DNA from: Utricularia gibba
Taxonomy: Eukaryota; Plantae; Magnoliophyta
Direction: 5' to 3'
Length of the DNA stretch: 64,000 bases
Assembly (NCBI GenBank): GCA_002189035.1
Contig: NEEC01000010.1
Span: forward strand, 2,356,001-2,420,000
Part shown: positions 4,933 through 30,497 of the stretch, in pieces
Numbering within the stretch: the stretch's first letter is position 1
Layout: every line of letters starts with the position of its first letter
Notes under the pieces: generated by a model
Database searches by the model: none
What the model was told of the DNA's origin: nothing
What the model saw: the letters and a program-made list of their open reading frames with translations, nothing else
Position numbers and translations under genes: made by a program

Positions 4933-5112
4933 GTGAGCGTGTGAATGCATGTAACGGCTATGCTTTCTTTTTTGCCTTGTTTAGGCGATAGCTGCGGATC
5001 AATAAGACAGATTCACCTGAGATCTCAAGAAGCATTTTTTTATCTCTGTGTTTGTAGACAAAATAATTCAACTAAAAAGAAGATAAAATAAATGCAAAAA
5101 AGTTACATTCTT

Positions 5113-5185
5113 GATCGCGTGGCCTAATGGATAAGGCGCTCGCCTCCGGAGCGGGAGACTGTGGGTTCGAGTCCCATCGCGATCG
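5113..5185 (+). tRNA. tRNA-Arg(CCG): tRNA-Arg(CCG), intronless
   Basis: Acceptor stem GATCGCG/CGCGATC, A box TGGCCTAATGG, anticodon arm CTCGC-CT CCG GA-GCGGG, T arm GTGGG-TTCGAGT-CCCAT; 73 nt. Confidence 0.97.
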
Positions 5186-5199
5186 CTTCATATCAGTTC

Positions 5200-5206
5200 T
5201 TTTTTT
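5200..5206 (+). terminator. Pol III oligo-T terminator of the tRNA
   Basis: T7 run 14 nt downstream of the discriminator base. Confidence 0.75.
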
Positions 5207-5507
5207 GCAAGCAAAACGCTGTTGATTGGAATAAATCAATCATGCAGTTGCAGCGTCGATCGAGCATTGCCTTTTTAAATCTTTAGGAATACATGGAATG
5301 ATTAATTGCTGTGTTGCAGCAGTGCCTTTTTTTTTTTATTTCTACCAATTACCTTGTACAATATATTATTTCAGACACGGAATTGAAAGAGAGCACAACC
5401 GGATCTGCAGGTGCGCAGAGTAGATCAGGCAGCATCCTACACGATAATAAAAACTCTGTAGAGATCTTCCTCTCCGCTTTACATACAAATCAGGCACCGC
5501 CCTCAGC

Positions 5508-7542
5508 TCAAACCGTCACTGGAACCGCCTCATCGAGGGCCAAAACCCCGGGAAGCTCCTTCCCTTCCAACAGCTCTAGACTCGCACCGCCGCCCGTCGA
5601 AATGTGGCTCATCACATTCGCAACCCCAACCTTCTCCACGGCAGCTACAGAATCGCCGCCGCCGATGATCGTAGTCACCCCCTTCCCACTGAGATCCGCT
5701 AGCTTGTTTGCGATTGCCTGCATTGCCGGACATGGTCAAGAACAGCAGCTTTTCGGTTAAAACTACAAATACGTTTTCAGGAGTGGGCATACCTCGGTGC
5801 CGACTGCAAATTTTTCAAACTCGAACACTCCCATGGGTCCATTCCAGATCACCGTCTTGGTCGTCTCAAGGGCGGCGCTGAAGGTCTTGATGGAGTCAGG
5901 TCCGATGTCGAGTCCCATCCAGCCATCCGGGATGGAAGAAGCGGGAACAACCTGTTGATACAACCACACCTTATCGCCACTGGCCATGAATGGATCTTGT
6001 TATGCAGAGCATTGATGAGTTCAGTATGGGACCTTGCTTTCTGCATCTGGGGCGAACTTGTCGGCGATGACGACATCGGTGGGAAGCAAGAGATCAACTC
6101 CTTTGGCCTTCGCCTTTGCTAGGAGCGATGTAGCGAGATCAAGCTTGTCTTCTTCCACCAAGGATGATCCAACGGACAGCCCTTGTGCTTTGTAGAATGT
6201 GAAGATCATCCCTCCGCCAAGAAGCAAAATGTCAACTTTCTCGAGAAGGGATTCGATCACACCAATCTTGGAAGAGACCTTTGAGCCACCCACAATTGCA
6301 GCAAATGGCCTTTTGGGGTTGGAAACAGCACCAACAAGATAGTCTAGCTCCTGTGTCGCAGTAACCAGAACAGCTGATAAGAAAACAAAACTACCAACAC
6401 GTTTCCAATATCAAAGAACGTAGCTTTATCAAACCTTCTGCAAAAGGAAGCCGGCAACTGAAGGCTTCAGGAACTTTGTCACTCCCTCGGTGGATGCATG
6501 TGCTCTGTGTGCAGTACCAAATGCGTCATTTACATACAGGTCTGCTAAAGAGGCAAGCTTTTGAGCAAACTCGGGCTCATTTTTCTCTTCCTCCTTGTAG
6601 AATCTCACGTTCTCAAGAAGGAGAACGCCACCATTAGGTAATGAGCCAACCAGATTTTCGACCTCTGGACCTATGCAGTCGTCAGCTTTCACAACCTGAG
6701 CCATTCGGGCAACGTATAAACTCATACTGAATTATATGTAATGCAGATATGGGTAGAAAACAAGTGGTCTTATTGCTTCAAGCACCCTCTGAAAATAGAA
6801 CCACCAAGAGTTCATCTAGCCCTCAAAATTGGAGGTACCTGAATTCCCAGCAGTTCGGATAGCCTGGGACAAGAGGTGCTAGGCTATACTTTGGGGTGAC
6901 ACCTTTTGGCCTTCCCTGAGTAACAAACAAAGATCAAGCTTTATTATTCAACTGAGGATGATATATAACTGCATATTATTGAAAAACTATCAGGAGGCAA
7001 TCCAGATTGCTCATCGATGTAGAAGGCTGAGAAGCTTTGTAATTCTACATACAAGCAGTAAAAAGGGACTTTTTTTTAGGTAACAGAGACAAAGGGTGAT
7101 CCAGAGTTCATCGAAGAACACTGCACTGATAAACACTCACCAAGTGGCTAGAAAGAATGACTTTAGCCCCATTGTTGATCAAGTGCTTGATGGTGGGCAC
7201 CGCAGCTCTGATCCTCGTATCATCAGTGATGTTCTGGCTATCATCGAGAGGAACATTAAGATCAGCCCTCACAAACACCCTCTTCCCCTTGAGATCGACG
7301 GAAGATAGATCGCCGACGCTCTTCTTCGCCATGGAAACAACTCCCCTCACAGGCTTTGACTTCAGAGAGACCTGCTTACTGGAAACGAAATGTGCGAAAA
7401 TTGGGTCGCCGGCAGTGGCGGAAAATCCCAGACGAGACTTGCCGAAAAAGTGGGTTGTGGGGAGAGTGTGGGAAGCCATGGTCGCGGCAGCGGAAGTCTT
7501 GGGGATCCCGCAGAAGACGAGAGACGCGGCCGCGGACGCCAT
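5508..7542 (-). CDS. PGK1: Chloroplast phosphoglycerate kinase, 6 exons (apparent -1 indel in exon 2)
   Basis: Transit peptide MASAAAS..., then [30 protein letters not shown] and [16 protein letters not shown]. Exon 2 (6915-6839) is 77 nt where 78 nt is needed. Confidence 0.95.
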
Positions 7543-7993
7543 TGTCGAAAGATTGCTGCTGTGAGGGGCGTCGGAAACGAGTGTGGGTTTGATCGAGCAA
7601 CCAGAAAGACAAATAGACAATCGAAATGAGCTGATGATGATGAGGCTCTGTGGGCACAGGTTGTGGGTGCCCCTTATCGTCAGAAGATAATTCAGTGATT
7701 CTCAGGCACACACCCACACCCCCTCCGGCATACTTACAAAACCAAGATACCACCTTTGCACTAAACTAACCTACGAATCAAAGGCAATGTAATGAAAACC
7801 ATTGTTTTGGTCAAAAAAACGTAGTAAAATCCGAATGCATTCTCCATAATGTTTTAGATAGGAAATGGTTTCATTTCACTTATTCCAAAGGTAGTTTTTT
7901 TTCGTCTTTTGAGAAAAATGTTGATACCTGCACCACAAAGAAGAGGATCGGTGTAGTTTTTACACCATGAATTACACTGTCTCTATATACCGC

Positions 7994-9798
7994 TTATAAT
8001 CTGCTGGCTGGACCGCCTTTAGCGGCCGAGCGCGACCGTTTCTCCACCGCCCGAGAGAATTGTTTCACGGCATCTTTGGAGAAAAGACGAAGCTTGCTCA
8101 GCCACATCCCTCCATCAACAGGCAAAGTGCTTCCATTAATATATCTACCTGCACAGATTCGCACAAACAACAGCTTTCAATCTCAAAACAAATCTTCATC
8201 TGCTAAATAGAAAGCAAGCCTATAGAATGTTACTTCAAAGCAAGCCTAAAAACTAAGCCCTTTTCCTGAAGTAAACCCCGCCGGTGAAGGTAGGCTAGAG
8301 ACTTTTCGAAGCAAAAGTAAAGAGTAAGGGGTCATGGTCCATGTTGTAACTGGAAATGAGTGAGTTAACAGCATAAAACAAGGACTGACCGGCATCCGAG
8401 GCCAGAAAAACAGCAGTCATAGCAATATCCCACTTGGTTCCAAGTCTAAACAGAGGCATGTAATCACTTGCTATGCCGTCTATCTCTGGTGGCGCAAGCT
8501 TACTCATGCCAGGGGTATCGCCGATGGGACCTGGGGCAATCCCATTTACCCTGATATCGTAGTCCGTACCCCATTCAAGTGCTAAGCCTCTCGTTGTGGC
8601 ATCAACAGCAGCCTGAGGAGAAAAAGCAGTTTAACACCGAAATTTCTAGAAAGCATAAGTGAGCAGGAATCATCAATGCATTCAGAGACCTTAGCAGCAG
8701 CAACATGGATCTGATACCAAGATGCAGTGTAATGTAATGTGGCACTGATGTTCAATATAAGCCCTCCGGTGGAGGTTTTCCCTGGCCCACCTTTCTTAAG
8801 GTAAGGAAGAGCCTCATGGCACATTGTAAACGTTCCAACAGAATCAATGTCCATCACTACAGAATATAACAAGTTGTTCTATCACTATAGTGTATGCTTG
8901 AAAAAAAAACAAGGCAAATAAAGGCTTAATGATCCATGGAAAAGCTACAAGTACTTCCTGAAAACAAGAGTAAAATGAAAAACACGATTATCAAGGGCAC
9001 TTTCATAGTTCCTTCCATTTTATATTCAGAGACCAAAAGGCTAAGCATTAATCGGAAACCGTATGAATCCAGAGTACACAACAGTCTTCAATGAACACGA
9101 GAACGAACTACGCAAGATTACATTTTCAATATAGAAAGGCGTAAAACAAGCCAATGTACACAACAAAGTAGAATTAGCTTTATATATGGGTTTGAGCATC
9201 ATCCTTTCCTTTCCTTTCAACGTTTGCTTTATGTGGAATTAGAAACATTATAGTTACCACATTATTTGAACAGGCACAAGCAGATTAACTTCAAAAACCG
9301 AGGTCAGCTGACTACTTCGAACAATTACCTGTTTTAAAGCCGTTCGGAGAGAGATCCTCAGGAGAAACCAGAAAATTTCCGGCCGCGGCGTTCACGAGAA
9401 TGTCGAGCTTCCCAAAATGGTTCACGGTTGCCTCCACCACTCTTCGAGCATCTTCTTGGTTCCTCACGTCCCCCTCGAACCCAACAGCCTAAATAAAAAG
9501 TCATCCATCAAAAAAATTCCCCAAAAAAACCCATCTCAGTCCCACAACTGGGCGCAATAAGCGTTTTATCGTATTTAATTAGACATGGGAGGAGGAAGAA
9601 CAAGAGAAATACAGGAATTCCAAGCGACAGAAGAGCCGTAACGGCGGCGTCAAGTACAGCTTTTCTCCGGCCCATGATGGCGACAGAGGCGCCATGCTTA
9701 CCGAACTGAGTCGATATCTCTAACCCAATTCCCGACCCGCCGCCGGTCAAAAGAGCTACCTTCCCTTGTAGAACATCGGCCTTGAAAGGCGATTCCAT
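7994..9798 (-). CDS. SDRB: Peroxisomal 2,4-dienoyl-CoA reductase (SDR family)
   Basis: TGGGSGIG Rossmann motif, LVNAAAGNF, NISATLHY, VNGIAPGPI and VDGG. The last exon ends GGPASRL*, a PTS1 signal; stop at 7996-7994. Confidence 0.93.
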
Positions 9799-9967
9799 TT
9801 CTTGGACTTCTATGGATCGCTGAAACCCACGGAACTTAAAAAAAAAACAAAACGCATGTTTTATAATGTAAAATGTATTTAAAATGAAAAATATATTATG
9901 TAGTAGTTATTGGGCACAATTGATACCACGGAGGTTATTTTGGTACTTTGCCGACTGGCGTCATCTA

Positions 9968-9977
9968 TTTAGGGTTT
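9968..9977 (+). promoter_or_regulatory. Telo-box at the head of the snoRNA cluster
   Basis: TTTAGGGTTT. Telo-boxes are common in plant snoRNA and ribosome-biogenesis promoters. Confidence 0.55.
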
Positions 9978-10004
9978 CTTCCATCCGTCTTCGCACCCAG
10001 CGCC

Positions 10005-10113
10005 TCTCTGGGGATTCAATACTGCGTTTTTTAAGCCTTACTCCGTAGCAATCTACGTTAATCGGCGGAGGGACGCCGGTGATGCGATCTGAATTGTCCG
10101 TACCATCTGAGCA
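10005..10113 (+). ncRNA. Box C/D snoRNA guiding 2'-O-methylation of 25S rRNA (5' boundary uncertain)
   Basis: TTGTCCGTACCA (10094-10105) is a perfect 12-nt complement of conserved 25S UGGUACGGACAA and ends 1 nt before D box CTGA (10107-10110). C/C'-like GTGATGC at 10079. The true C box is degenerate or not located. Confidence 0.65.
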
Positions 10114-10244
10114 TCGATCTCTTTCCAGAGGTTTTGTGTGATGCTTCAAAGTTAGCTTCTGAGGTCTCCCTCTGTCTACGGTTCCATCCCTCGTTTCATT
10201 CAAGATTCTATATGGTCTTGATTTTCGATTCCTCTTTTCGAATC

Positions 10245-10300
10245 GGCGACGAAGGCCTACATTATGGTTTTGATTTCAGTCAATCGTTCGTACCTGAGCT
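10245..10300 (+). ncRNA. Candidate second box C/D snoRNA (U34/snR62-like guide)
   Basis: Layout: C-like GCGACGA (10246), GCCTACATT (9-nt complement of 25S AAUGUAGGC), D'-like ATGG, C'-like TTGATTT, and D box CTGA (10294). The boxes are degenerate and the duplex is short. Confidence 0.35.
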
Positions 10301-10346
10301 CTCGATTTTCCATTTTTCTTAAAACGAAATTCTGGCGTTTGATTTG

Positions 10347-10492
10347 AAGGCAATAAATTAGAGTCACTGGTGCACCTTGTTTGAATGGTGCACACAGCGC
10401 TGTACGTTGCCGACATCAGAATTCTCTGGCGCTGAGATTCTGGCATCGCCTTACACACAATGAGGCAAATGCATTCAGATGTGCCTACATCT
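10347..10492 (+). ncRNA. Box H/ACA snoRNA
   Basis: Hairpin 1: lower stem GGCAA/TTGCC, upper stem GTGCACC/GGTGCAC. H box ACATCA at 10413-10418. Hairpin 2: GGCGC/GTGCC, GCAT/ATGC and GCCTTA/TGAGGC. ACA at 10487-10489. Both pockets sit about 14 nt from their box; total about 146 nt. Confidence 0.65.
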
Positions 10493-11776
10493 TCATCCAA
10501 TCCTCTTTTGAATTTTTTTTATTTTCAAATTTCGGAAAAGATACTGTACCAGTATATGAGAAACTTATCAAAATACTAGAACTGATTTAGATTTCAAGAT
10601 TGCGAAAACAGATCAAACAGAAGACTGTTTTTTGTTATCCGATGAACGATTTGAAAAATTGTTGTGAAATTTTTCTCCGGGCAAATTTATAAATCGCTAC
10701 GTTTTCCTCACTCTACTAGAGTTCATCTACTCCTACCTCTCGCCGAACATCTGCTGATGTGAATCGTCGGGCATGTTGCCCCAAGGAAGAAGCTATGCCA
10801 TATAACCTGCCACCGGAGGCGATGCTGATTGCTGAGGGAAAGTCTCAAAAAAGATGTGAAGGCTATGCTTGTAATTACTGAAAAATTGTACATCATTTAA
10901 AAAATTATTTAACTTTGCAGTTGGTTTAATAATTTAACAACATAATTTGTTTACATAAAACGTTGTAAACATTTTTTTCCAAAATCTTAGGTCACTGAAA
11001 ATGCAAATTAAATGATTACTCTTTTTAAGGTAATTAATTTATTACTCAAACCCCACAGAGTAAATTAGCATCGTATCGGTGTTTTAAGATCAATTTACAA
11101 CATATATCATATATTAAAAATGTGCTTAAAACATATTCTATTAAAAATATTTTTTTATAAGTTAATGTAAAAAGTTTAAAATAATTTTATAAATTTATAA
11201 TTTCTACCTTATGATAAAAACATATCGAAAATTGATTTTCGATAAACTCTTTCTTTAATTTGCAAAATATCCTAATAACGGTAGATGCGAAACATGGATG
11301 GCTGGAGATGTAAGGGTGCCAGAACCGGAGATGGGCAAACGGCTATAATCGTGCCTGATTATTCCGTCTGGAGAAGGTGAACTTCCGAACAAAAGCTCGC
11401 CGGAATGAAGTAAGCCCATCACCAGATACATTTCTCTAAAATCTGACTCATTCTGGTCTCCCTGAGGCACTAATTTGCTTCTCAACGAATCTAAATGGCT
11501 TAAATGCAGTCTATTTTGCAAACCAGATGCGGGTGTTATACAAACAGAATGAGAGGCAGGCTACTTGATCAATGCGGCCAAATGCCATCATTCGTCTTTG
11601 TCATTTGATTTGACATTCATTCACCATTGTTGGGACGTGCTTGTCTGGCCTGGCATGGTCAATCGCAAGAGACCTGGCAAAGCTCCAATTTTTTCCTCCT
11701 ACTTGTAACTGTGGCGATGCACATGAGATTCCACCTTTCCCTGTCCTCTGCCATCTGAATTCACTCTTGCTGCCAG

Positions 11777-17295: not shown

Positions 17296-20200
17296 ATGCC
17301 GCTGTTTATGTCCGATGAAGAGTTCCAACGGTGTTTGGGCGATGCTGGAAAGGTGGCGGAGAAGGCCGATGAGTTTATTCAGAAAATGAATGTTGAGGTA
17401 GAAAAGGTGAGGTCGGATTCTCAGGCGGCTTCCATAGCACTTGAACAAACGTGCTTTGATATTGAACAAAAATATGCATCCCTTTCTGCGGAGAATGCGG
17501 AACTGCATTCGAAACTTGTGGCACTTAAAGGTTTGGTAGAACAGCGGAATTCTGAAATTGAGCGGGTTCAATCGGAAAAGCAGCAGCTTGCTCTTCAATC
17601 CGTGAGTTCATGTTTGAAGTTTTTTTTTGTCGGTTATTTTGTCATTGGTCGATAATTTTATTTTTTTATGGGTTTATTGACAGATTGAGAGGGATGGGGA
17701 GATTGAACGCCTCAGAAGGGAGGCATCTGAAGCCCATGTGTCGAAGAGGCAACTGATAGAACTCTTGGAGCACAAGGAATTAGAACTCAGCGAGAAAAAT
17801 GCGACCATTAAGAGTTATCTCGACAAAATTGTATCCCATTTTGTCCTCTCTTGCTTGTTTCAGTGATTTCATGTCACAAAATTGAAGATTCTGTATTTCA
17901 ATAATGTTGAATTAGCTCATTTTGACTTCTTGGAGGTAAATTTGACGGAGAATGCAACATCAAAAGAAGTCCGGATGGCTGATATGGAATTTGAAGTGGG
18001 ACAATCGAAGGCTACATCTGCCCGCTATTCACAGGTACATGGATTTTCTATTTGCTCGGCAATATTTTGCCTTTTGTTTATTTTTCAATAAGTTCATCGT
18101 GTTGCAATGTGCCTTTATTTTTTTAGCATTTGATATTTAATGGTTAGCTGTACTGTGACATTTTTCACTGCTTCATTAACTGAGTGAAGGATATTTAAGA
18201 TTGTTTTTGTCCGATTTTTATTATTTTCTTACATGGTTAGCCTGCAGTTATTCATTGATAAGGCCAACTGGCAGTTACTGTATCTAATTTGATTCGAGCA
18301 GGAAAAGGAGCTTCTTGAGAGGCATAATGCGTGGCTTAATGAGGAGTTGAATGCAAAAATGACCACCTTTATCCAGTTGCGTAAAGAAAAAGGGGAACTT
18401 GAAGCTGATATGACTTCTAAACTTGCTGATGTGAGAATATATATATTTCTTGTTTATGTGATCTTTGTGGATTGGAATCATAAGTTGATACATATATTTC
18501 TGAATCTGTATGGTTCAGTTTTGTACTGAAAGCTGTTTTTAAGTTCCCTTTTTTTCCACAACATTAACAGTTCAATTAAATCCTTTTTTTTTTCTTGATC
18601 CAGGCTGAAAAGCAACTTAAGGAGAACTCCAGCTCCATGAAAATGCAGAATGAAAGAGTAAAAGAATTGGAGGAAAAGCTGCTGTTGGTCGAAAGTGTAT
18701 GCTAATTGGCATTTTGTCTCTTTCTTCAGTGTCCGTCAGCATGTTTGTAGTTATTTTTTTCTCCTACATAACTCTTTTATTTCCCTTTTCTTTTTTACAC
18801 ATTAGGAGTTAATGTCGGTAAAGAATGCCTCTGTTGCTGCAGAGGGGAGCTTCAATGCTGAAATCTCTACTGTAAGTTTATATGTCTTCTGTTACTGAAT
18901 TCAGTCAATAGTTTTTTTTTCTAGTTTTTACTGTAATGATTGAGCAAATTTTCTCTGAAAATGTTCTCTCCGTTGGTTTTCTATTATACATTTTCTAGTT
19001 ATGGTATGCAGGACTCCTGCTATTTATAAACTGGGATATTATGATTTTACTTTTTTTGTTCTCAAAGGTGAACAAGCTTGTTGAACTGTACAAGGAAAGT
19101 TCTGAGGAATGGTCAAAAAAGGCTGGGGATCTTGAGGGTGTTATCAAGGCTATGGAAGTATGATTTCTATATTTTTTTTTTTTTTTTCGTTTGAAATTGC
19201 AACTACATTTTGAACTAACGACACATGGTCTTTTTTTCAACATCATGTGTCTAACTATTTGTCCACTGAGCAGGTTCATTTTAGCCAAGTTGAAAATGAA
19301 TACAAAGATAAGCTCGAAAAAGAAGCCGATTTGAGGATTAAATTAGAAAAGGCATGTTGTATTTCATATTCTTTTTCTTTTGGTTATGATAAGGGGAAAA
19401 TCCTGGATGAAAATTATTACGACTAGTCATTATGCTCTTTAATTTTAGATTTTGGCTTATCTTTATTGAGATTTTCTTGGTATTTTTGCGTAAGTAAACT
19501 AGTTAATGTGTTTTTCATGTGTAGGAGTCAGCCAACTTGAGGGAACAGCTACAAAATATCACAGCTGATTTAGAAGGTCTGAAGAAGGGAAATGAACAAC
19601 AGCTGGTTCTTAGTAGTAATGCAACTGATTTGTGAGTACATATAGTATTGTTAGTCAGCATTGTCCATGTTTCTCCAACTTCTGTGTCGGCTGTTGTTGA
19701 TATTTTCTACGCCATGATTTCCATTTCAATAGTTTGCTGTGATTTAGTGTTCGATGATCAGCTTCATTGTTTGTTTGCGTTGGATTGACGCTGGCATGAT
19801 TTTGTGTAATATTATTTCTTCTTAGACTCCCAGGGTCCATTGATACTGGTGAAGTTGCTGGTGATGATCGTGCTGTTGTCCCAATTATTCCAATTGCTGT
19901 ATCAGAAACAGCATGTGCTGCTGCGCTTCTTAGGGATGGGTGGACTGTGAGTTGCATGTTTTGTTGTATACCTATTTATTAGTATCTCTAATATTTCGCA
20001 GCTTTCTTATTTGTTATTTCCTGTGTTATTTGAAGCTGGTAAAACTGTACTCAAAATATCAAGAAACATCTGATGCCCTTCGTCATGAGCAGATGGGGCG
20101 AAAGCATGCACAGGCTGTCTTAGAGAGAGTATGTTATTGATGATAGCCAATATCTTTTGCTATTTAATAATGCTGTTTTCTCTAGATTGGATCTGCGCCT

Positions 20201-23200
20201 ATAGCTTAGCACCTTAATTGCATCTGGTTTGGTTTTCTCAGTTATATTGCAAATACTTCTTAGGTAACATGATGTGATTTTTAGTTTAAGTCCGCCAGCA
20301 TTGCATTTAGTTTTGTAGGTGCAATCTCATTTCCATTTTTTGTAGAATTAAAAACAAGCCAACTGTGCCATGTCTAGGAATATTTTTTTTCCAAAATTTG
20401 ACTGACCTATCTTGGGGTGGTGGAGTGATGATAACGAGTTGGTTTTTTTAGGTACTTTATGAAGTAGAGAAAAAGGCTGTGGCCATCTTTGCTGAACGAG
20501 GTTTGTCTTTTTGTAATGTGTTCCAACTCAATGATAAATTCGATCATTGATTGCTATTTGAAGTATGATCGACTTTTAGTTTGAAAATACCCGTGTTTCT
20601 ATGCCATGCTTCTTTTAAACGTTTGTAAACTTTGAAGATTAGTCTGGCCTCAGATGATATATTTGAATGCGAAGCTTTTTTTAAACATTTCCAACCTTCC
20701 AAACTCATTTTATCTTGTATTTATCATTGATATCATACAAGCTATTCTGTATGTCTAAAGGGCATCATAAACTTTTTTTGGTTAGTCCTTGGTGTATCTT
20801 GCAACTGCACTTTAATTTTCATTATGCGGTGCGTGGATCATGTCCATGTTGAATTCTTCCATATGATATAGTGTTTATTTCAACATTTGCGTTCTTGCAG
20901 AGGAACATGAGAGATTTCTTGAGGCTTACTCTACTTTAGAACAGAAACTGCAAGATTCTAAACTGGAGCATTCTGTTCTGGAGACGACAATTCAAGACCT
21001 TAAGGTTGGTTGGTGCTGTCGATTTCTACTATATTTCATTCAAAAAATCATGCTATGCGTATTGCTTTTCTGATTGGGGGATGTTCATTTTGTTTTCCAG
21101 GCTAACTTAAAGAGGCAGGAGCGTGACTATGCTATTGCTCAGAAGGAGATTGTTGACCTCCAGAAGCAGGTCCAAGAAGAGACTTTGTGTGTGTGTGTGT
21201 CTGTCTGCATATGTGGGCTATGGCTCATGGTTAAAATATTTATGATTTCCATGATATCCATCAATTCAGATCATGTTTTGCTTCTTTAATAGGTGGCGGT
21301 TCTCTTAAAGGAGTGTAGGGATGTGCAGCTGCGGTGTGGATCAGCTGCTGGCCAAATTGATGATGAACTGGAAATGGTTTCAGCCGTAGCATCAGATGAT
21401 GAGAATAGCATAGAGCATATCATCTCTGAAAGACTGGTATAGTTTTTGTTTGTTGGTATCCTTTTCTCTGGATATTTCTGGTACAGAATCTGAAATTTGT
21501 TGTTGGTCATGCAGTTGACATTTAAGGATATACATGGCCTGGTTGAGAAGAATGTTCAACTTAGGAGTCTTGTTCGCAAACTTTCAGAGCAAGTAGAGGA
21601 GAGAGAAACCACATTGAAGGCATTTCCAAGTTTCTTTTGCATTCTCTGTCTGAAATCTGATTATATTGACATTATGAGTTTACTTGTTTTACTTAAATAC
21701 ATTTCAGGATGAGTATGAAAGGGAGCTTCAAAGGCACACCGAAGACTCTGAACGTAAAGTAAATGCAGTATTGCATAGAGTAGAGGAACAGGGAGTGATG
21801 ATTGAGTCACTTCATTCCTCTGTAAGTGTTTCAACATTAGTCTATGCTTCAATTTTTGTTATGACTGTTGTTTATTGATGAACTCCAGCAGTTTTTTATA
21901 ATCTTGCATATGATAATAACATGAATAGGTGGCAATGTACAAAAAGTTATATGAAGAACAGAAACTCCATTCTTATCCTTCCCGTGAGAAGGATGATGTT
22001 CAAGGTTCTTCCTCTTTCTTAGAACCGTCATTGGACTTGATTGTGTAAGATTAAATTATGTCTAAGAACAAAAAGAAGTTTTCTCTTCGTGATGTTTTCA
22101 AATCCATTTTGAATTGAATTCTGGAGCTATGGATGCGGTTTATAAGATGTAAGATTAAAGTTCTTAAATGGGGCATCTATATTCAACTCATCTTCTGGTT
22201 TTTCGTATTTTATGCTTGTAATATCTTTCTATGGTAAATGCCACCCCTTATGACAGTTTTGTATTCCTAAAGTTGCCAACTATCGATCCATTATACTCAA
22301 CCACCATGTTTTTTCTTTCTGTTGCAGAACAACGAAGTGGGGACACAAATCTACGTGAAATTATTCATGTGTGTTTTTCCTTTATTTTCTGATTAAAAGT
22401 TTCTCATGCAATTTCTTTTCTAGTTTTGATTTGATGTTCGCCAAACTGTGTATTTTAATGTTAAAAAGTAGGGTCTTCACAAATTTTTAGGCAAAAGCAG
22501 AATGAAAAGATTGAATGTAGGAGGAAGTCATGTTTAACTTCTTTAAAAATCGTTTATTTGAATTATGTTGTTGTAGGTCTTATCTTCAAAGACAAAAAAT
22601 CACTCTTTTGGCCCCCTGAAAGATCTCGAGGAAGATTTAACGAAATTTAGGTATCATCCCGACTCTGTGATTTTGTGCTTCTGCACAGCTCTGTGCTGTA
22701 ATGCAAACTATCTCTTTCATGTATTCTAGCTGTAGATCATTTAACCACTATTGGTGATTGAGTGCTTTGGCTAGTTTAAGAGCTTTCTTATTTTCCCTTT
22801 TGTTATAAAAGCTCTAAGCACCATTTCTCAGTCCTTTTCACTCTATACTTGTGCCGAGTTCTCACCTATGCCGTTGCTGAAGTACTGTGGCTTTCTTAAT
22901 ATTTTTATATAAGCATCACCCTTTTTTTTTCCTTTAAATCTCAGGAATGAGGCTACCTCCTTGCGATCTGAGCGAAGCCAGTTAGTGATGGAAGTACAAT
23001 TTGCACAAGAAAAACTTTCTAGATTTATGAACGAATTTGAGCAACAGGTCTAAGTGAAGACCCCTACTCCCATTTCCGGAGTTTGAGTCTTTAGTGTAGT
23101 TTTTTGTTTTTTTTTTTCATGTTAATATTTGCATTTATGTCATTTTCATGTTTTCCTACTGAATATTTGGTTTTTGCTTTCTTTTCCTCCCCAGAAAGAG

Positions 23201-25388
23201 GAGCATAATCGAGTCCTAGCCAGGAATATAGAGTTCCAGCAGTTGATTATTGACTACCAGAATAAGCTGCGAGAAAGTGCTCAGTCTTTGGATGCTTCCA
23301 ATGAGCTCTTGTCAAAGCTACAAATGGAGGTATATGATTTCGTTTTTATAGAAATCATTCTCTGTGTTCTGTGTTGCCATCAATGTACAACTTGTTATGG
23401 GAATTCTTTCATAGGCGTCAATCTTGAAGCATGAAAAGGAAATTAGTCAGAACTCAGAGAAAAGAGCATCTGATGAAGTTCGCAGTTTGTCAGAAAGACT
23501 TCACCGGTTACAGGTTTTTGTCTGTAGATTTTTCAAAAAAAAAAGGGGGATTAAAGGTTCATTTGAAACCACATTTCCTTCTACCTACTTCTATTTATTA
23601 TGTTCTTTGCCGGTAGGCCACGCTGGAGACGATTCATAGTGCAGATGAAGCACGTGAGGTCAATTTTGTACATTTTCCTTTATCCCTACCTGGGGTTTAT
23701 TTATTTATTTATTTATTTTTTGCTTCTTTCTAACCACTCCACCTTAATTTGAATTATGATTTTATATGCTCTGGATAGGAAGCAAGAAGTTCTGAAAGAA
23801 AGCAGCGGGAAACATATGTCAATAAAATGGAGGTATCCTTTGTAATTTTTTTTTTTATCTATATACCATGCGGGTATGTAAATAATTTGAGCGTGTTCAT
23901 CGAATTTCAAACACAATTTATATGAAGGAAAACAATACACGCATAGAAATTTTTAATACTAGGTTGCTTATGATACTTTTTTTTTTTTTTGCGAAGAAAG
24001 AGTGGGCTGAATTGAAACAAGAGCTTCAGGCTGAACGGGACAACTACAGGAATCTTTCTCTTGAACATGAGGCCACCTTAAGGAATGCTTTGAGACAGCT
24101 TGAAGATTTGAGAAAAGAATTGGCCGATGCAGTGCAATCTGCAGCAGCTGCTGAGGCTCGAGCTGCAGTTGCTGAGGTCCAACAGAAGCTTTTAACTTCA
24201 TCGTGTGGATTATATTGTTGCATTCTATTTGGTGGTTTCTACCTTACTGAAACCACAATTTTTTATGATGGTGAATTTTTTTTCCCCAGGCTCGTAGATC
24301 TGATTTGGAGAAGATCGTGGAGTCAGGGATAAATAAGGTATCAGTATTCTCTGAGTCAGTCTCATCCGCAACACGCACAAAACAACGTTGCTTTATTTCC
24401 GTGTTAGAGCTTCCTAGTGTACTGATTATGTATTCTCTGAGTCAGTCTTCTGGTGCTGCCGGAGGCGATACATCCTCTGGCGAGAAGGTAATCCTCCATA
24501 TGAATGATACCTTGTGTAATTTGCATGTGTGACATGCTCAATTTCTGTACTATTTTATGTGAATCTAGGCGACTGCTTTCTATTTGCGCATTGCATTTTT
24601 TGAATCCATGCCCAATAGCATGTGCTGTAATATTTTTTTTAAAGCCATATGCTTGTATCCCGTTGGTCTATTACACCAACCTTTAAACTGCCACATGTCA
24701 TGCATGTCAGTTAACTGGTGCACTTTCTCTGACATCTGTGCTTATATTTTTTAAGTTTCTCGAGTCCCTCTTAGACTTCCCATCATTAGAACTCTTTTAT
24801 AATCAGTGGGCTGTGTTATTTAAAGCCGAGTTTAGGTCATGCAAAGGTCACCTTTCAGGTCTTGGCGAATTTCCATGATGAAGTTGAAAAATTGAGAGAT
24901 GAAGCCAAGGCTAGCAAAGAACACATGCATCAGGTGACTTGGAGGGAAATGCTGGTTGTCATCTGTTATATCTCTCATTTTCCCTTTCTAGCACTTTTAT
25001 TCCTTACCCTTCTACCCCCATTTAGTACAAGCACCTTGCTCAAGTCAACGAAGAGGCTTGCAAGCAATTGGAGTTGGCCCATGAAAGTTTCAAGAATGAG
25101 GTATTACTTTGGTTCCTGGCCCTATTTATTCTCTACTCTAGCTTCGTTTTTGAAACTTTTTTCTACAGGCTGAAGAAGTTAAGAGATCACTTGATGCTGA
25201 ACTTGGGTCCCTCAGAAATCATGTTCATCATCTTGAAGATGACTATAGAAGGAAAATTGAGGAGGCAGTTGCCGCAAATGCTGAAAAAGAAGAGGCGCTT
25301 GCTACTGCCATTTCTGAAATCGCCAGCCTTAAGAATGATTGTTCAGTAAAAACGTGAGCCCTTGCTGCAACCTACCCCCCCCCCCCCC

Positions 25389-25422
<34 letters not shown>

Positions 25423-28400
25423 CAATGCGTTGATGGTTTATCTTGTACCTTCTGCTAGATTGTCATTTTATTTATTTAACACCCCTAGATCACGGATTAT
25501 TGAGATGGAATCTCAAGTATCTGCCCTGAGGGAAGATTTAAAAGAAGAGCATATAAGATGGCAGTCAGCTAAAGAGAACTATGGAAGACAGGTTTGTTGT
25601 GTCTTTCTTTCGCCAATGTGTTTCTTTTAGTGACCTGCCAATCTCATTTTGTTGTATGTTAGGGCCAAAATTATTTTGGGCGCTCCTTGTTGTGTACCTA
25701 TTGGATGAATAATATCATGGCATTGTCCGTTGATGTTAATGTGGGATAGTTTATGATGCGTATCATACAACCATATTCGTTTAGGGTATTCCATTCATCT
25801 TTTCTCCAAGTCAATCTGCAATCGCTGCAGCCAGTCAGTGTGTCCTTTTTAACGTTTACATGAACTTTACAAGAACTATGCTCCTCATGTGGTTATTGTT
25901 TCCTCTTCTTTGTTGTGCAGGTCATTCTGCAGTCGGAAACAATTAAGGAATTGACTGAAACGTCAAATGCCTTGGCTTCAGTACAGGAGGAGTTGTCTGC
26001 AATTCGTAAAGTGGCAGACGCTCTCAAAGTTGAAAACGTACGTCTCTTAACTCGTTAAACTTTGAAATTGTTATGTAAATGGTAAGCAGAAATATCATCC
26101 AAAAATATAATTGTATTCCCCGGTCATGATTCACTTGCTTGTACACAATCATCTGCTTTTGCAGAATGAACTCAACTCAAAGTGGGAAACTGAAAAGCTG
26201 GCCATAGACGTTTACAGACAGGAAGCTGATAAGAAGTACGCCGAAATTGACGAACTGAACAAAACTTTGCTCAGTCGTCTTGAGGCTCTGCATATTAAAT
26301 TAGCTGAGAAGGATCGAGGCGTTGCTTCTGACAGCAGTTCATCTGATGAAAGTGCAATGCTAAATGTTGTGAATTATCTCAGAAGGACGAAGGAAATTGC
26401 CGAAACAGAGATTTCTTTGTTGAAACAAGAAAAACACAGGTTGCAGAGTCAGCTGGAGTCCGCTTTAAAGTCATCTGAGGCTGCACATACATCTCTCAGT
26501 GCTGAGAGAGCAAAAGCTCGGGCATCATTATTCGCTGATGAAGATTTTAAGTCTCTTCAAATGCAGGTTAGAGAAATAAATTTACTTCGTGAAAGTAATA
26601 TGCAGCTCAGGGAGGAGAACAAACATAATTTTGAAGAGTGCCATAAATTGCGGGAAGCTCTCAGGAGTGTTCAGAATAAAACTGAGAAATTGGAGAAGCT
26701 TCTGGGAGATAAAGATTCTGAACTTGAAGCTAACAGAAAAGAAATTGAGAATCTCAAGACCGAAATAGTGAATTTGCAACTAAGAATTGATGAGTTGGTG
26801 GACAAATACAAGGACATCAACATCGATGACTATTATCTCCTGAAGGAATCTTCTCTGAAGACTGCTGCTATCTTAAGAGAGAAGGATTCCCAAATGGAGG
26901 GACTTAAGAAACAGTTATCTGAAAAGCAGGAAGCTGCAGCGCTTTTAGAGCGAGAAGTTGCTAAAAATAGTGCAGAACTGAATGAACGTGATGCCAGGAT
27001 TAACGAACTGTTGCAAGCTCAGGCATCTTTGAAATCGGAAATTGACAGGGGTCGGCGACTAAATGCTCATAGGAAAAAACTGGAAAAAGAAAAGGAGGAC
27101 CTTGTTAAAGAGATGGAGGCCCTGTCGAAAGAACTGGAGGCAGCCAAACAGGGATCATCAGCTGAACAAGCTCAAAAGGAAAAAGAGAAGGAAAAGGACA
27201 CCAGAATTCAAATTCTTGAGAGAGCTTTAGAGAGGTGCAGGGAGGATCTCAAGAAGGAGAGAGATGAGCATCAAAAAGAAAAAGATAGAGGTAGCAAGAA
27301 TCGGAAGACAGTTGCTGATACACTCGAAACAGTCGCGCAGCATAAGAAAACTTTTTCTGTCGAGCTTGACAAGCACAGGGAAGCCGTAAAACTTGTTGCA
27401 GAAGAACTAGAAAAACTGAAGGCTTCTGGGAGAAGTCTGTCGGACACCATCTCACCTCCCTCCAGTGCTCCCTTGGAGGATTTTGCATCTTCATATTTTC
27501 AGGCTGTAGATAAGTTTACTCAAGTTGCACAATCAGCATGTAATGAGCCACCTGTTGCTTCGGATACTGGACCTGTTGATACTTCGACGTCTGCTGGAGC
27601 CCCTGCATCTAATCAAGTTGTTACTCCAAGTGTCCAGCCCTCCTTGGTGCCCATTGCAAACGCTGCTTTAACACGAGCCACTGACGAGAAAGATAAAAGT
27701 TCTGTAACAGTCAAGCCTGTTCTCAAGACTGCAAGGAGACTGGTGCGTCCTAATGTTACAAAGCCTAAAGGACCTCAAGGTGATGTGGAGATGCCAGAAG
27801 CAGATGATTCCAGCTCTGCATTACCATCCCAAACGACAGAAACTCCAGTGACTGCTGTTGTACGCAAGCGATCATCATCTTCAATTCTCTCTGAGGTACA
27901 GGATGATATACCTGCTGTAGAAGAATCTGTCTACGACATGCCAGCTCCTCCACAGAAAAAGTCAAAAGCATCAGAAGATGTCGCCCCAGAAGGTGGTGAA
28001 AGAACTCCTGCTCCACCTTCAGGACTTCCTGATGCTGAGACTGCAGAATCACTAGAAGATGCTGCGGCTTCTCTGCAAGTGGGTAATGAGGAACCCGCTG
28101 ATGCGGGAGATGAAGTTGAAACTGCATGGGAGCAGGCTGAAGAGCCTACAATGGACGAACAAATTCAAGTTGAGTTATTAAGGGAGACAGGCGAAGTTGC
28201 TGAGGGTAAACCAGAAAATCCAAATGAAGGAGTCTCCTTCGATGATCAAATGAGAGATCAAACTGAGCAAGATATCCAACAAGCAGTTGCTGAATCTGCT
28301 TCTCAAAAAGAAGAGGGAGAGATGGAAACAGATTTTGATGAAAATGAAGGTGATGGTAACCTATCAAGAGAGGAGACGATTAGCCCTGTAACTGGAGGAC

Positions 28401-28867
28401 TTCAGACCGAGCAACCATTGGAAGCTGAGAAATCACAAAGCGCCAAAGCAAACCTGGACATAGAGGCAGGGGAGATCCTTCCAGACGCACCTGCGGTGGA
28501 GAAAAATGCCGACGCCACAGATGCCACTGTTGACATCGCAAATAAGCCTGATGATTCCTTATCCCCAACTCCTGAAATCCCCGAGCCTGCCGTTGCATTG
28601 ACAGTTGAAGAAACAACTTCCAGTACTCAGACTGACGTCGGATCTTCCGAACAAGGTCGACGTTCACCTTCTCAAGACGCCGGAGTAAAACCACCCTCCC
28701 CTTTAAACAGTGGTTCAACCACCACCATTAATCTACAGGAGAGAGCTAGACTTAGGGCGTCTCTCAGGCAGGCCGGCATAGGTGCCTCGCCACCCAGAGG
28801 CCGAGGGAGAGTTCAAGGTCGCGCCGCAAGAGGTGGCCGAGTCCCACGGGGACGATCAGCTGGATAA
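17296..28867 (+). CDS. NUA: Nuclear pore anchor (TPR/Mlp1 homolog), about 34 exons, last exon 26165-28867
   Basis: MPLFMSDEE...AEKADEFI N-terminus, coiled-coil exons (ALLRDGW, VLARNIEF, LRESNMQLREEN) and an RGG-rich C-terminus. Splice junctions were traced in frame. Confidence 0.95.
25375..25422. repeat. Compound microsatellite C16-(TC)8-(AC)8 in a NUA intron
   Basis: Read directly from the sequence. Confidence 0.9.
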
Positions 28868-29498
28868 GCAAGGTCAGTTTCTCTTCCCGACAAGGATGCA
28901 CTTTGCTATTGATCATGGCCATCTCCATGTCCCATGATGCTGGTCGATGAAGACAACGGTTATTTTGGACAATGCTCCCGTTATAGCTTCTTCTGCTACA
29001 TTTTTGAGCTTATGATGTTCAACATTCCCTGTTCGTTTCATGAGCCCTCTAAATCTTATCATTTTTCTATGGCAGAGCATGGTGTAATTTAATAGCATGT
29101 AAATGCCCACATATTACTGTAAATATTGTGTACGGTATACGCAACCAGGGTTGCCCGACAGCCTGGTTGTCGACTCGCATGCCCATGTGCCTTCTCAATA
29201 GAATATTTCGAATGTTGCACCACGGTGGCCGCAGTCCGACGACGGTCGGTAGGGACGGCCGTGTGGCGGCGGTGGAATGCGGTGTATTATGTTTGTTAGG
29301 AGTCGGTACGCGAGGGAAAACAGAGAAAAATACCTGGAATATATATTGGGAAAGAGAACAAACGTCGCCTTGCCAGTTGCCATTATTCACGCTATCCCTG
29401 TCCAAAAAACCTTCAGTCGTCAAGCTCCCATCATCGCATTTACTCCATTTTAGTCCAAGTTTTTTCCCAGATCCCTCTTCTCCAGTTCTGTTTTCTGG

Positions 29499-30497
29499 AT
29501 GGGTTCCTCGTCTGAGGATGAAGGCGAGGAGTATCTGTTCAAGATCGTCATTATCGGAGACTCCGCCGTCGGAAAATCTAACCTTCTGTCGCGCTACGCT
29601 AGAAATGAGTTCAATTTGCATTCCAAGGCTACAATCGGGGTTGAATTTCAAACGCAGTCGCTCGATATTGACGGCAAAGAAGTTAAGGCTCAGATATGGG
29701 ATACCGCCGGCCAGGAAAGATTCCGCGCCGTCACATCTGCCTACTACCGCGGTGCGTTTGGCGCACTCGTCGTTTATGATATAAGCAGAAGATCTACGTT
29801 CGAGAGCATTACCCGGTGGCTTGATGAACTTAAGAGTATGTGCTTCCTTTTCCTTACGAAATTAGAATGCCTCTTGGTTGGAACTTTGTGACCTCGAGTA
29901 TGAATACAAGTTGAATTTGCTTTGAAAGTTGTGGTCTTTGATCTCCTTGCAAATTGGGATGTAAATGGACTTGGTCAAGCTAGATCTGACCCTCTATAAC
30001 ATGAGTTATGATATTGAAACTGTTTGGCAGAGATCCATCCAGGAACATGAACCGGTTCAATGAGTTGAACATTCATTCATTCTGTGGCTGATAATTTAAT
30101 GCTCGTTTTCTCGTTTTATTACTTTTCCATGTTTGATTGCTTGATGTCGATTTTATTTGTTCTTGATGCAGCTCATTCAGATACGACTGTCGCCAGGATG
30201 CTTGTTGGAAACAAATGCGATTTGGAGAGCATCAGGGATGTCAGTGTTGAGGAAGGGAAAGAATTAGCCGAATCAGAGAAGTTGTTTTTCATGGAAACCT
30301 CTGCATTGGACTCAACTAATGTGAAAAAGGCCTTCGAAATTGTGATCCGTGAGATCTACAACAACGTAAGTCGAAAGGTGTTGAATTCTGACTCTTACAA
30401 AGCCGAACTGTCGGTCAACAGGGTATCCCTTGTGGATGATGCCTCTGATACATCAAAGTCAGCCAATGGATCCTCCTATTCCTGTTGCTCCTCCTGA
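29499..30497 (+). CDS. RABA5: Rab GTPase RABA5 (ARA4-like), 2 exons (intron 29836-30171)
   Basis: [30 protein letters not shown] and ETSAL motifs; C-terminal CCSS prenylation motif. Confidence 0.95.

What the first reader, a model, noticed from the sequence alone, without database searches (positions are those of the whole stretch)
26165..28867. NUA: one 2.7-kb intronless exon after 33 tiny introns, a candidate block intron loss
Seen: the 5' part (17296-26164) is cut into 33 small exons, then 900 codons run with no intron. Recalled knowledge: Arabidopsis NUA has about 49 exons with introns continuing through this region, so about 15 adjacent introns appear to be missing. Proto-splice-like CAG|GT remains in frame, e.g. 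at 26564-26568. Inference: recombination with a 3'-primed partial cDNA removed them in one event, leaving a sharp boundary at 26165.
Basis: partly seen in the sequence, partly recalled or inferred. Interest (0 to 1): 0.75.

Follow-up and report, generated by a model that had tools for sequence, protein, structure and literature searches.

The report
Old block intron loss in NUA
The nuclear-pore gene NUA here really ends in one 2.7-kb exon that replaces 15 ancestral exons, but olive and sesame have the same fused exon, so the 14 introns were lost in an early ancestor of the order Lamiales and not in this genome.

Summary
Window 26165-28867 (+) is a 900-codon terminal exon of the plant nuclear-pore anchor gene NUA/TPR. 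It follows 33 small exons (17296-26037), 31 firmly mapped and 2 tentative.

I mapped annotated NUA proteins exactly onto their own genomic loci. Morella, Thalictrum, Eruca, Camellia and Escallonia share 14 introns inside this stretch, at conserved positions and phases. All 14 are absent here, with no indel at the junctions.

The loss is therefore real, precise, contiguous and covers the 3'-most coding introns. This is the pattern the reverse-transcriptase (cDNA gene-conversion) model predicts.

It is not an event of this genome. Olea europaea, Sesamum angustifolium and an unnamed Lamiales genomic contig have the same single exon starting at the same retained intron. A Coffea isoform appears to keep at least one of the 14 introns. 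The loss therefore maps to the Lamiales stem.

The mechanism, and whether it was one event, are inferred and not shown. A sunflower NUA copy has independently lost about 46 of 47 coding introns.

An earlier follow-up in this scan reached a similar verdict for GP210 in this genome. This is an ordinary example of a known process, and interest is low to moderate.

The parts
17296..26037 (+). 5' part of NUA: 33 small coding exons (35-306 nt, median 99) separated by short introns, all at ancestral positions
   Evidence: Exon-by-exon mapping against Camellia exon peptides with GT/GC-AG boundaries. 28 of 33 lengths are identical to Camellia. Exons 19 (22338-22372) and 28 (24446-24487) are tentative. 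tblastn chain.
26038..26164 (+). Intron 33 (127 nt, GTACGT...TTGCAG): the last retained intron and the 5' boundary of the block loss
   Evidence: The same phase-0 position carries an intron in Morella, Thalictrum, Eruca, Camellia, Escallonia, Olea and Sesamum.
26165..28867 (+). Terminal coding exon, 900 codons plus TAA, equal to 15 fused ancestral exons
   Evidence: ORF. Single colinear tblastn HSPs to the Olea, Sesamum and L001 loci.
26257..26258 (+). Lost-intron site 1 (between residues 31|32, phase 0)
   Evidence: intron present here in Morella, Thalictrum, Eruca, Camellia and Escallonia.
26398..26399 (+). Lost-intron site 2 (78|79, phase 0)
   Evidence: present in all five outgroups.
26452..26453 (+). 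Lost-intron site 3 (96|97, phase 0)
   Evidence: present in all five outgroups.
26566..26567 (+).
   Evidence: atgcag|gttaga. Intron present in Morella, Thalictrum, Camellia and Escallonia.
26644..26645 (+). Lost-intron site 5 (160|161, phase 0)
   Evidence: present in all five outgroups.
26794..26795 (+). Lost-intron site 6 (210|211, phase 0)
   Evidence: present in all five outgroups.
26866..26867 (+). Lost-intron site 7 (234|235, phase 0)
   Evidence: present in all five outgroups. The Vitis and Camellia protein models diverge at this point.
27022..27023 (+). Lost-intron site 8 (286|287, phase 0)
   Evidence: present in Morella, Thalictrum and Eruca.
27076..27077 (+). Lost-intron site 9 (304|305, phase 0)
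   Evidence: present in Morella, Thalictrum and Escallonia. The window has its own 4-residue deletion just downstream, which Olea and Sesamum lack.
27152..27153 (+). Lost-intron site 10 (codon 330, phase 1)
   Evidence: present in Morella, Thalictrum, Eruca and Escallonia. The window has a lineage-specific 7-residue deletion next to it, absent from Olea and Sesamum.
27211..27212 (+). Lost-intron site 11 (349|350, phase 0)
   Evidence: present in Morella, Thalictrum, Eruca and Escallonia.
27340..27341 (+). Lost-intron site 12 (392|393, phase 0)
   Evidence: present in Morella, Thalictrum and Eruca. In Escallonia the donor is cag|GTTTTC and the next exon lies 5.9 kb downstream. The Coffea isoform ends here with unrelated residues.
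27445..27446 (+). Lost-intron site 13 (427|428, phase 0)
   Evidence: present in Morella and Eruca. Camellia exons flank it. The Thalictrum annotation places it at 413|414.
27611..27621 (+). Lost-intron site 14 (about codon 483-486, phase 1). The position is approximate because this region is poorly conserved.
   Evidence: present in Morella and Thalictrum. Also present in Camellia.
27621..28867 (+). Part that corresponds to the ancestral, already long, last coding exon (1388 nt in Morella, about 1.3 kb in Thalictrum)
   Evidence: Exon lengths. The C-terminal motif TTINLQERAR...RGGR..RG is conserved to the stop.
28868..28880 (+). Donor-like gcaag|GTCAGT 5 nt after the stop. Untested as a 3'-UTR intron; probably a remnant of ancestral C-terminal codons.
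   Evidence: Similar gaag|GTCAGT in Sesamum and ggag|GTGACT in L001, but not in Olea. Outgroup proteins run 3-4 residues further (..EQG). No RNA data.

Best explanation
Window 17296-28867 (+) is the ortholog of the plant nuclear-pore basket gene NUA (Tpr/Mlp1/Megator homolog). The ancestral eudicot gene had about 47 coding introns. In an ancestor of the order Lamiales, the 14 most 3' coding introns were removed precisely. The removal came before Oleaceae split from the core Lamiales, and probably after the split from Gentianales. It fused 15 exons into one exon of about 2.7-2.8 kb.

This genome simply inherited that structure and still keeps all 33 upstream introns. The most likely mechanism, which is inferred, is gene conversion of the resident locus by an incomplete cDNA that was reverse transcribed from the 3' end of spliced NUA mRNA. 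One crossover would lie in or downstream of the last exon and the other inside the 93-nt ancestral exon that now begins at 26165.

The protein is unchanged in kind: a coiled coil followed by a disordered acidic and RG-rich tail.
For: Shown:
- The exon is real and coding throughout.
- Exact splice mapping of annotated proteins on their own loci was completed for seven of eight species. It places introns at identical positions and phases in Morella, Thalictrum, Eruca, Camellia and Escallonia. These species bracket Lamiales: a basal eudicot, rosids, Ericales and a campanulid.
- Olea (last exon 2763 nt), Sesamum angustifolium (2811 nt) and the genomic Logan contig L001 (925-aa ORF after many small exons) all lack the same 14 introns. 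All three keep the same boundary intron.
- There are no alignment gaps at the 14 junctions in Olea or Sesamum, and most ancestral exon lengths are kept to the nucleotide.
- Given 14 losses among 47 introns, the chance that they are exactly the 14 most 3' is 1 in 3.4e11 if losses were independent and uniform.
- The gene tree follows the species tree, (Coffea,(Olea,(core Lamiales including the window))), so these are orthologs.
- The Coffea isoform P0033 ends ...SQ|VCLLVE exactly at site 392|393. The Escallonia model has the same signature and demonstrably reads through a GT donor.

From the literature: apple NUA has 47 exons (PMC7566457). Precise, adjacent, 3'-sided loss is what the reverse-transcriptase model predicts (PMC3652778, PMC4256211).
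Against: - No intermediate taxon was available, so a single event cannot be told apart from several events on the same stem branch.
- Retention in Coffea rests on the end of one isoform, not on genomic DNA.
- A possible 3'-UTR donor at 28873 is untested.
Confidence: 0.85

Rival explanations
1. Recent block intron loss specific to this genome or its near lineage, as part of its genome compaction.
For: This genome has short introns (median 123 nt) and tight gene spacing, and the exon boundary is sharp.
Against: Olea, Sesamum and L001 carry the identical fused exon and boundary. The window nests inside core Lamiales in the gene tree, with Olea outside. Independent identical 14-intron losses in each lineage would be needed.
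Confidence: 0.02
2. Several separate intron losses on the Lamiales stem (stepwise cDNA conversions or exact genomic deletions by NHEJ or microhomology) that together happen to cover the 14 most 3' introns.
For: Nothing in the data dates the 14 losses relative to each other. Exact genomic deletion of introns is documented in plants (reviewed in PMC4256211).
Against: Perfect contiguity with none of the 33 upstream introns touched. No junction indels in Olea or Sesamum. The lost introns range from 73 nt to more than 5 kb in outgroups, which does not fit a deletion process biased towards small introns. The combinatorial odds are 1 in 3.4e11 under independence.
Confidence: 0.1
3. The long exon is ancestral and the 14 introns were gained in other lineages.
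For: None beyond the bare presence/absence pattern.
Against: The same positions and phases occur in Thalictrum (Ranunculales), Morella and Eruca (rosids), Camellia (Ericales) and Escallonia (campanulid). These species surround Lamiales on the tree. One loss explains this, against many identical gains.
Confidence: 0.01
4. Assembly or annotation artefact: the region was filled from transcript sequence.
For: None.
Against: The exon is contiguous with intron-bearing sequence upstream and with a neighbouring gene downstream. Four independent assemblies agree.
Confidence: 0.01

Closest known systems
Reverse-transcriptase (mRNA-mediated) intron loss by cDNA gene conversion (Fink model; tested in PMC3652778 and PMC4256211)
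   Same: Exact in-frame removal, simultaneous absence of adjacent introns, restriction to the 3' end, retention of 5' introns, and the gene stays at its own locus.
   Different: The block is large (14 introns, with a 15-exon fusion) and old (order-wide). The cDNA intermediate and the single-event claim are inferred and not observed.
GP210 block intron loss in this same genome
   Same: Another nuclear-pore gene with a few 5' introns followed by one giant exon. It was also judged ancient and not specific to this genome.
   Different: That loss is reported as shared by core asterids including campanulids. The NUA loss is narrower: Escallonia and Camellia keep the introns, so it maps to Lamiales. 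I did not re-test the GP210 claim.
Sunflower NUA copy (L006, P0030)
   Same: The same gene, with exact fusion of exons and the 5'-most intron retained.
   Different: It is far more extensive (about 46 of 47 coding introns gone, one 1859-codon ORF). It is independent, because the campanulid Escallonia retains the introns.
Arabidopsis NUA / At1g79280 and apple MdTpr/NUA (47 exons, PMC7566457)
   Same: Orthologous nuclear-basket protein with the same coiled-coil plus disordered-tail layout. The 5' exon-intron pattern is conserved.
   Different: Those genes keep introns through the region that is a single exon here. This was shown here for the Brassicaceae relative Eruca.

Membership tests
Plant NUA / Tpr / Mlp1-2 nuclear-pore anchor | Full-length sequence similarity to named NUA proteins | tested here: met
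   E 3e-258 to Sesamum 'Nuclear-pore anchor', with 97% of the 900 aa covered. Hits run across angiosperms. The gene tree follows the species tree.
Plant NUA / Tpr / Mlp1-2 nuclear-pore anchor | Pfam TPR_MLP1_2 (PF07926) domain | tested here: inconclusive
   only the last 40 profile positions fall in this exon (residues 3-42, E 0.025, below the cut-off). Homologs carry PF07926, PF25481 and PF25785.
Plant NUA / Tpr / Mlp1-2 nuclear-pore anchor | Ancestral 5' exon-intron architecture | tested here: met
   33 exons, 28 with exactly the Camellia exon length.
RT-mediated (cDNA conversion) intron loss | Exact removal without indels at the junctions | tested here: met
   gap-free junctions in Olea and Sesamum at all 14 sites. 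The window's two nearby deletions are its own later changes.
RT-mediated (cDNA conversion) intron loss | Adjacent introns lost together | tested here: met
   14 consecutive sites, with no retained intron between them.
RT-mediated (cDNA conversion) intron loss | 3'-sided loss with 5' introns retained | tested here: met
   the block includes the last coding intron, and all 33 upstream introns are kept.
RT-mediated (cDNA conversion) intron loss | Gene remains at the parental locus (not a retrocopy) | tested here: met
   The upstream introns are at ancestral positions and contiguous with the fused exon in the window, Olea, Sesamum and L001. Synteny of neighbouring genes was not compared.
RT-mediated (cDNA conversion) intron loss | Germline or meristem expression of the gene; a cDNA intermediate | not testable with these tools
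   No expression data were available, and the event is ancient.

The most novel reading that the evidence does not exclude
The 14-intron deletion was a single cDNA conversion on the Lamiales stem and is a clean structural synapomorphy of the order. Together with the independent near-total loss in sunflower, and the GP210 case, it would mark long, highly expressed nuclear-pore genes as recurrent targets of RNA-templated intron removal in asterids. That would give a natural series of conversion tracts of different lengths with which to test the 3'-primed model.
Probability: 0.4. Interest if true: 0.35.

Novelty: new member of a known kind. Interest (0 to 1): 0.22.

Why it matters
[quoted passage not shown] It may also serve as a rare-genomic-change marker for Lamiales.

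It says nothing about how this particular compact genome shrank, because the structure was inherited from a distant ancestor. For annotation, it warns that a 2.7-kb terminal exon in Lamiales NUA is genuine and should not be split. Some deposited models do split or truncate it (for example the Rehmannia model and the sunflower model).

Tried and rejected
1. Three of twelve locus look-ups found no record: Erythranthe guttata P0011, Gossypium P0013 and Zea P0040. The cap then prevented fetching Solanales, Gentianales or a second Asteraceae locus.

2. The metagenome scan returned only four contigs. All are cDNA-like: L010 resembles Amaranthaceae and L011-L013 are from grasses. They align colinearly to Camellia across many exon borders, so they carry no intron information.

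3. Pfam on the exon alone gives only sub-threshold hits.

4. The exact splice mapper failed on the sunflower model P0030. The locus turned out to hold one long ORF that the deposited model cuts.

5. Literature searches found no description of NUA intron loss. They gave only the apple exon count and general intron-loss papers.

6. The 3'-UTR intron idea at 28873 was not pursued. The nearest conserved downstream block in L001 would leave an intron of only about 31 nt, and the donor-like bases line up with ancestral C-terminal codons. There are no RNA data.

8. The large representative search was not used, because the word search settled the identity of the protein.

Full report
**1. The observation**

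The + strand has an ORF at 26111-28867 of 918 codons. The sequence ...catctgcttttgcag|AATGAACTC places a good acceptor at 26164|26165, in frame with the ORF. The exon is therefore 26165-28867: 900 codons plus TAA. At the local base composition, 900 open codons have a chance probability of about 3e-24.

AT skew turns positive exactly over 26000-29000, against the negative skew of the intron-rich 5' part. The 900 residues hit named 'Nuclear-pore anchor' proteins over 97-99% of their length (Sesamum, E about 1e-258). The whole ORF is therefore coding, and the gene is NUA/Tpr.

I mapped the 5' part exon by exon. For each of the 33 Camellia exon peptides, I looked for an AG...GT/GC-bounded, stop-free segment of matching phase and length in order along the window. 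This gives 33 exons from the ATG at 17296 to 26037. Of these, 28 have exactly the Camellia length. The 33 introns are 68-400 nt, median 123.

Exons 19 and 28 are short and poorly conserved, and they are only tentative. The two gaps that hold them (594 and 510 nt) are long enough for an exon plus two introns.

**2. What the relatives show**

I fetched genomic loci for annotated partial NUA proteins. I then reconstructed each annotated protein exactly on its own locus, using GT/GC-AG junctions and 100% identity. The chain was completed for seven of eight.

After alignment to the window exon, five species share introns at window residues 32, 79, 97, 135, 161, 211, 235, 287, 305, 330 (phase 1), 350, 393, 428 and about 485 (phase 1). 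The five are Morella (Fagales), Thalictrum (Ranunculales), Eruca (Brassicaceae), Camellia (Ericales) and Escallonia (Escalloniales). Each intron is present wherever that species' model or its flank covers the site (for the distal Camellia and Escallonia exons).

All five also share the intron at residue 1, which is the window's intron 33. Ancestral exon lengths recur to the nucleotide between species: 93, 159, 54, 114, 78, 150, 72, 156, 54, 88 and so on. The last ancestral exon was already 1.3-1.4 kb. Apple NUA is reported to have 47 exons (PMC7566457), which agrees with 33 + 14 coding introns.

In contrast, Olea europaea (L003) has a last exon of 2763 nt, and Sesamum angustifolium (L002) one of 2811 nt. 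Both begin at the same retained intron. A 14-kb genomic Logan contig (L001) is 79% identical to Sesamum. It has many small upstream exons followed by a 925-codon ORF, and it shows the same structure.

At all 14 junctions, Olea and Sesamum align without gaps to the intron-bearing species. The window has two small deletions near sites 305 and 330 that Olea and Sesamum lack, so these are later and unrelated.

**3. When it happened**

A maximum-likelihood tree of the first 392 residues recovers the species relationships: (Coffea,(Olea,(core Lamiales))). The window falls inside core Lamiales on a long branch. Four further Logan ORFs of 843-928 aa also fall in core Lamiales. Their length suggests the same exon, but I could not fetch their DNA.

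Escallonia (a campanulid) and Camellia (Ericales) keep the introns, so the loss happened inside lamiids.

The Coffea arabica isoform P0033 ends ...ETVSQ|VCLLVE exactly at 392|393. The Escallonia model ends the same way (..TVQ|VFLYL). On its locus, that ending is a read-through of the donor cag|GTTTTC, with the next exon 5.9 kb downstream. By analogy, Coffea keeps at least that intron. This is an inference from a protein end, not from DNA.

The simplest placement is the Lamiales stem, before Oleaceae diverged. That Oleaceae is among the early-branching Lamiales families is established knowledge, not something tested here.

**4. Mechanism**

Shown: the loss is exact, contiguous, includes the last coding intron, and leaves all 33 upstream introns untouched. 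If 14 of 47 introns were lost independently and uniformly, the chance that they are the 14 most 3' is 1 in 3.4e11. In outgroups the lost introns range from 73 nt to over 5 kb, so a process that prefers small introns is not indicated.

Inferred: conversion of the resident gene by a partial cDNA of spliced NUA mRNA, extending from the 3' end to within the 93-nt exon that now begins at 26165. This is the classical reverse-transcriptase model, whose predictions are listed in PMC3652778 and PMC4256211. The latter paper also notes that a 3' bias is not general in plants.

Whether it was one event or a few on the same branch cannot be decided without intermediate taxa.

**5. The 3' end**

The window protein ends at the conserved C-terminus...TTINLQERAR...RGGRVPRGRSAG*. 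The donor-like gcaag|GTCAGT after the stop recurs in Sesamum and L001 but not in Olea. It lines up with the extra ..(E/D)QG codons of outgroups, so it may be a coding remnant and not a splice site. Without RNA it remains untested. It does not affect the main conclusion.

**6. Comparison and verdict**

This is a member of a known kind of event. I found no paper that describes it for NUA. An earlier follow-up in this scan reached a parallel verdict for GP210 in this same genome (s1-277532); I did not re-test it.

Noticed in passing
L006:2001-10601 (Helianthus annuus, GCA_026651695.1 CM048991.1): This sunflower NUA copy keeps ancestral exon 1 (306 nt) and one intron of about 2.6 kb. It then has a single 1859-codon ORF (5022-10601) that aligns colinearly to Camellia NUA residues 103-1369 and to the whole window exon. 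About 46 of 47 coding introns are gone, independently of the Lamiales loss. The deposited 3-exon, 1334-aa model P0030 seems to cut out real coding sequence. P0031 is a near-identical second entry.
   Followed up: partly
window 29499-29900 (+): The next gene starts only about 630 nt after the NUA stop. Its product ([33 protein letters not shown]...) looks like a Rab/RabA-type small GTPase, which shows the very tight gene spacing of this genome.
   Followed up: no
window 27077-27175: The window NUA has two lineage-specific in-frame deletions (4 and 7 residues) next to ancestral sites 305 and 330, which Olea and Sesamum lack. Its branch in the gene tree is long (0.45, against a median of 0.17), so this protein evolves fast in this plant.
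   Followed up: partly
P0054 (Rehmannia glutinosa), P0063 (Ilex), P0045 (Centaurea), P0046 (Camellia), P0012 (Vitis): Several deposited NUA protein models depart from homology inside this region. Ilex, Camellia and Vitis do so at ancestral intron positions (read-through or retained intron). Rehmannia, a Lamiales species, looks frame-shifted after residue 156 of the fused exon. Centaurea diverges near residue 250, away from the 14 shared sites. All appear to be annotation errors and not biology.
   Followed up: no
L010-L013 (JGI 'metagenome' contigs): The contigs returned by the metagenome scan are spliced plant transcripts (Amaranthaceae-like and grass NUA). That collection therefore holds metatranscriptome assemblies, and the absence of introns in them is not evidence.
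   Followed up: yes
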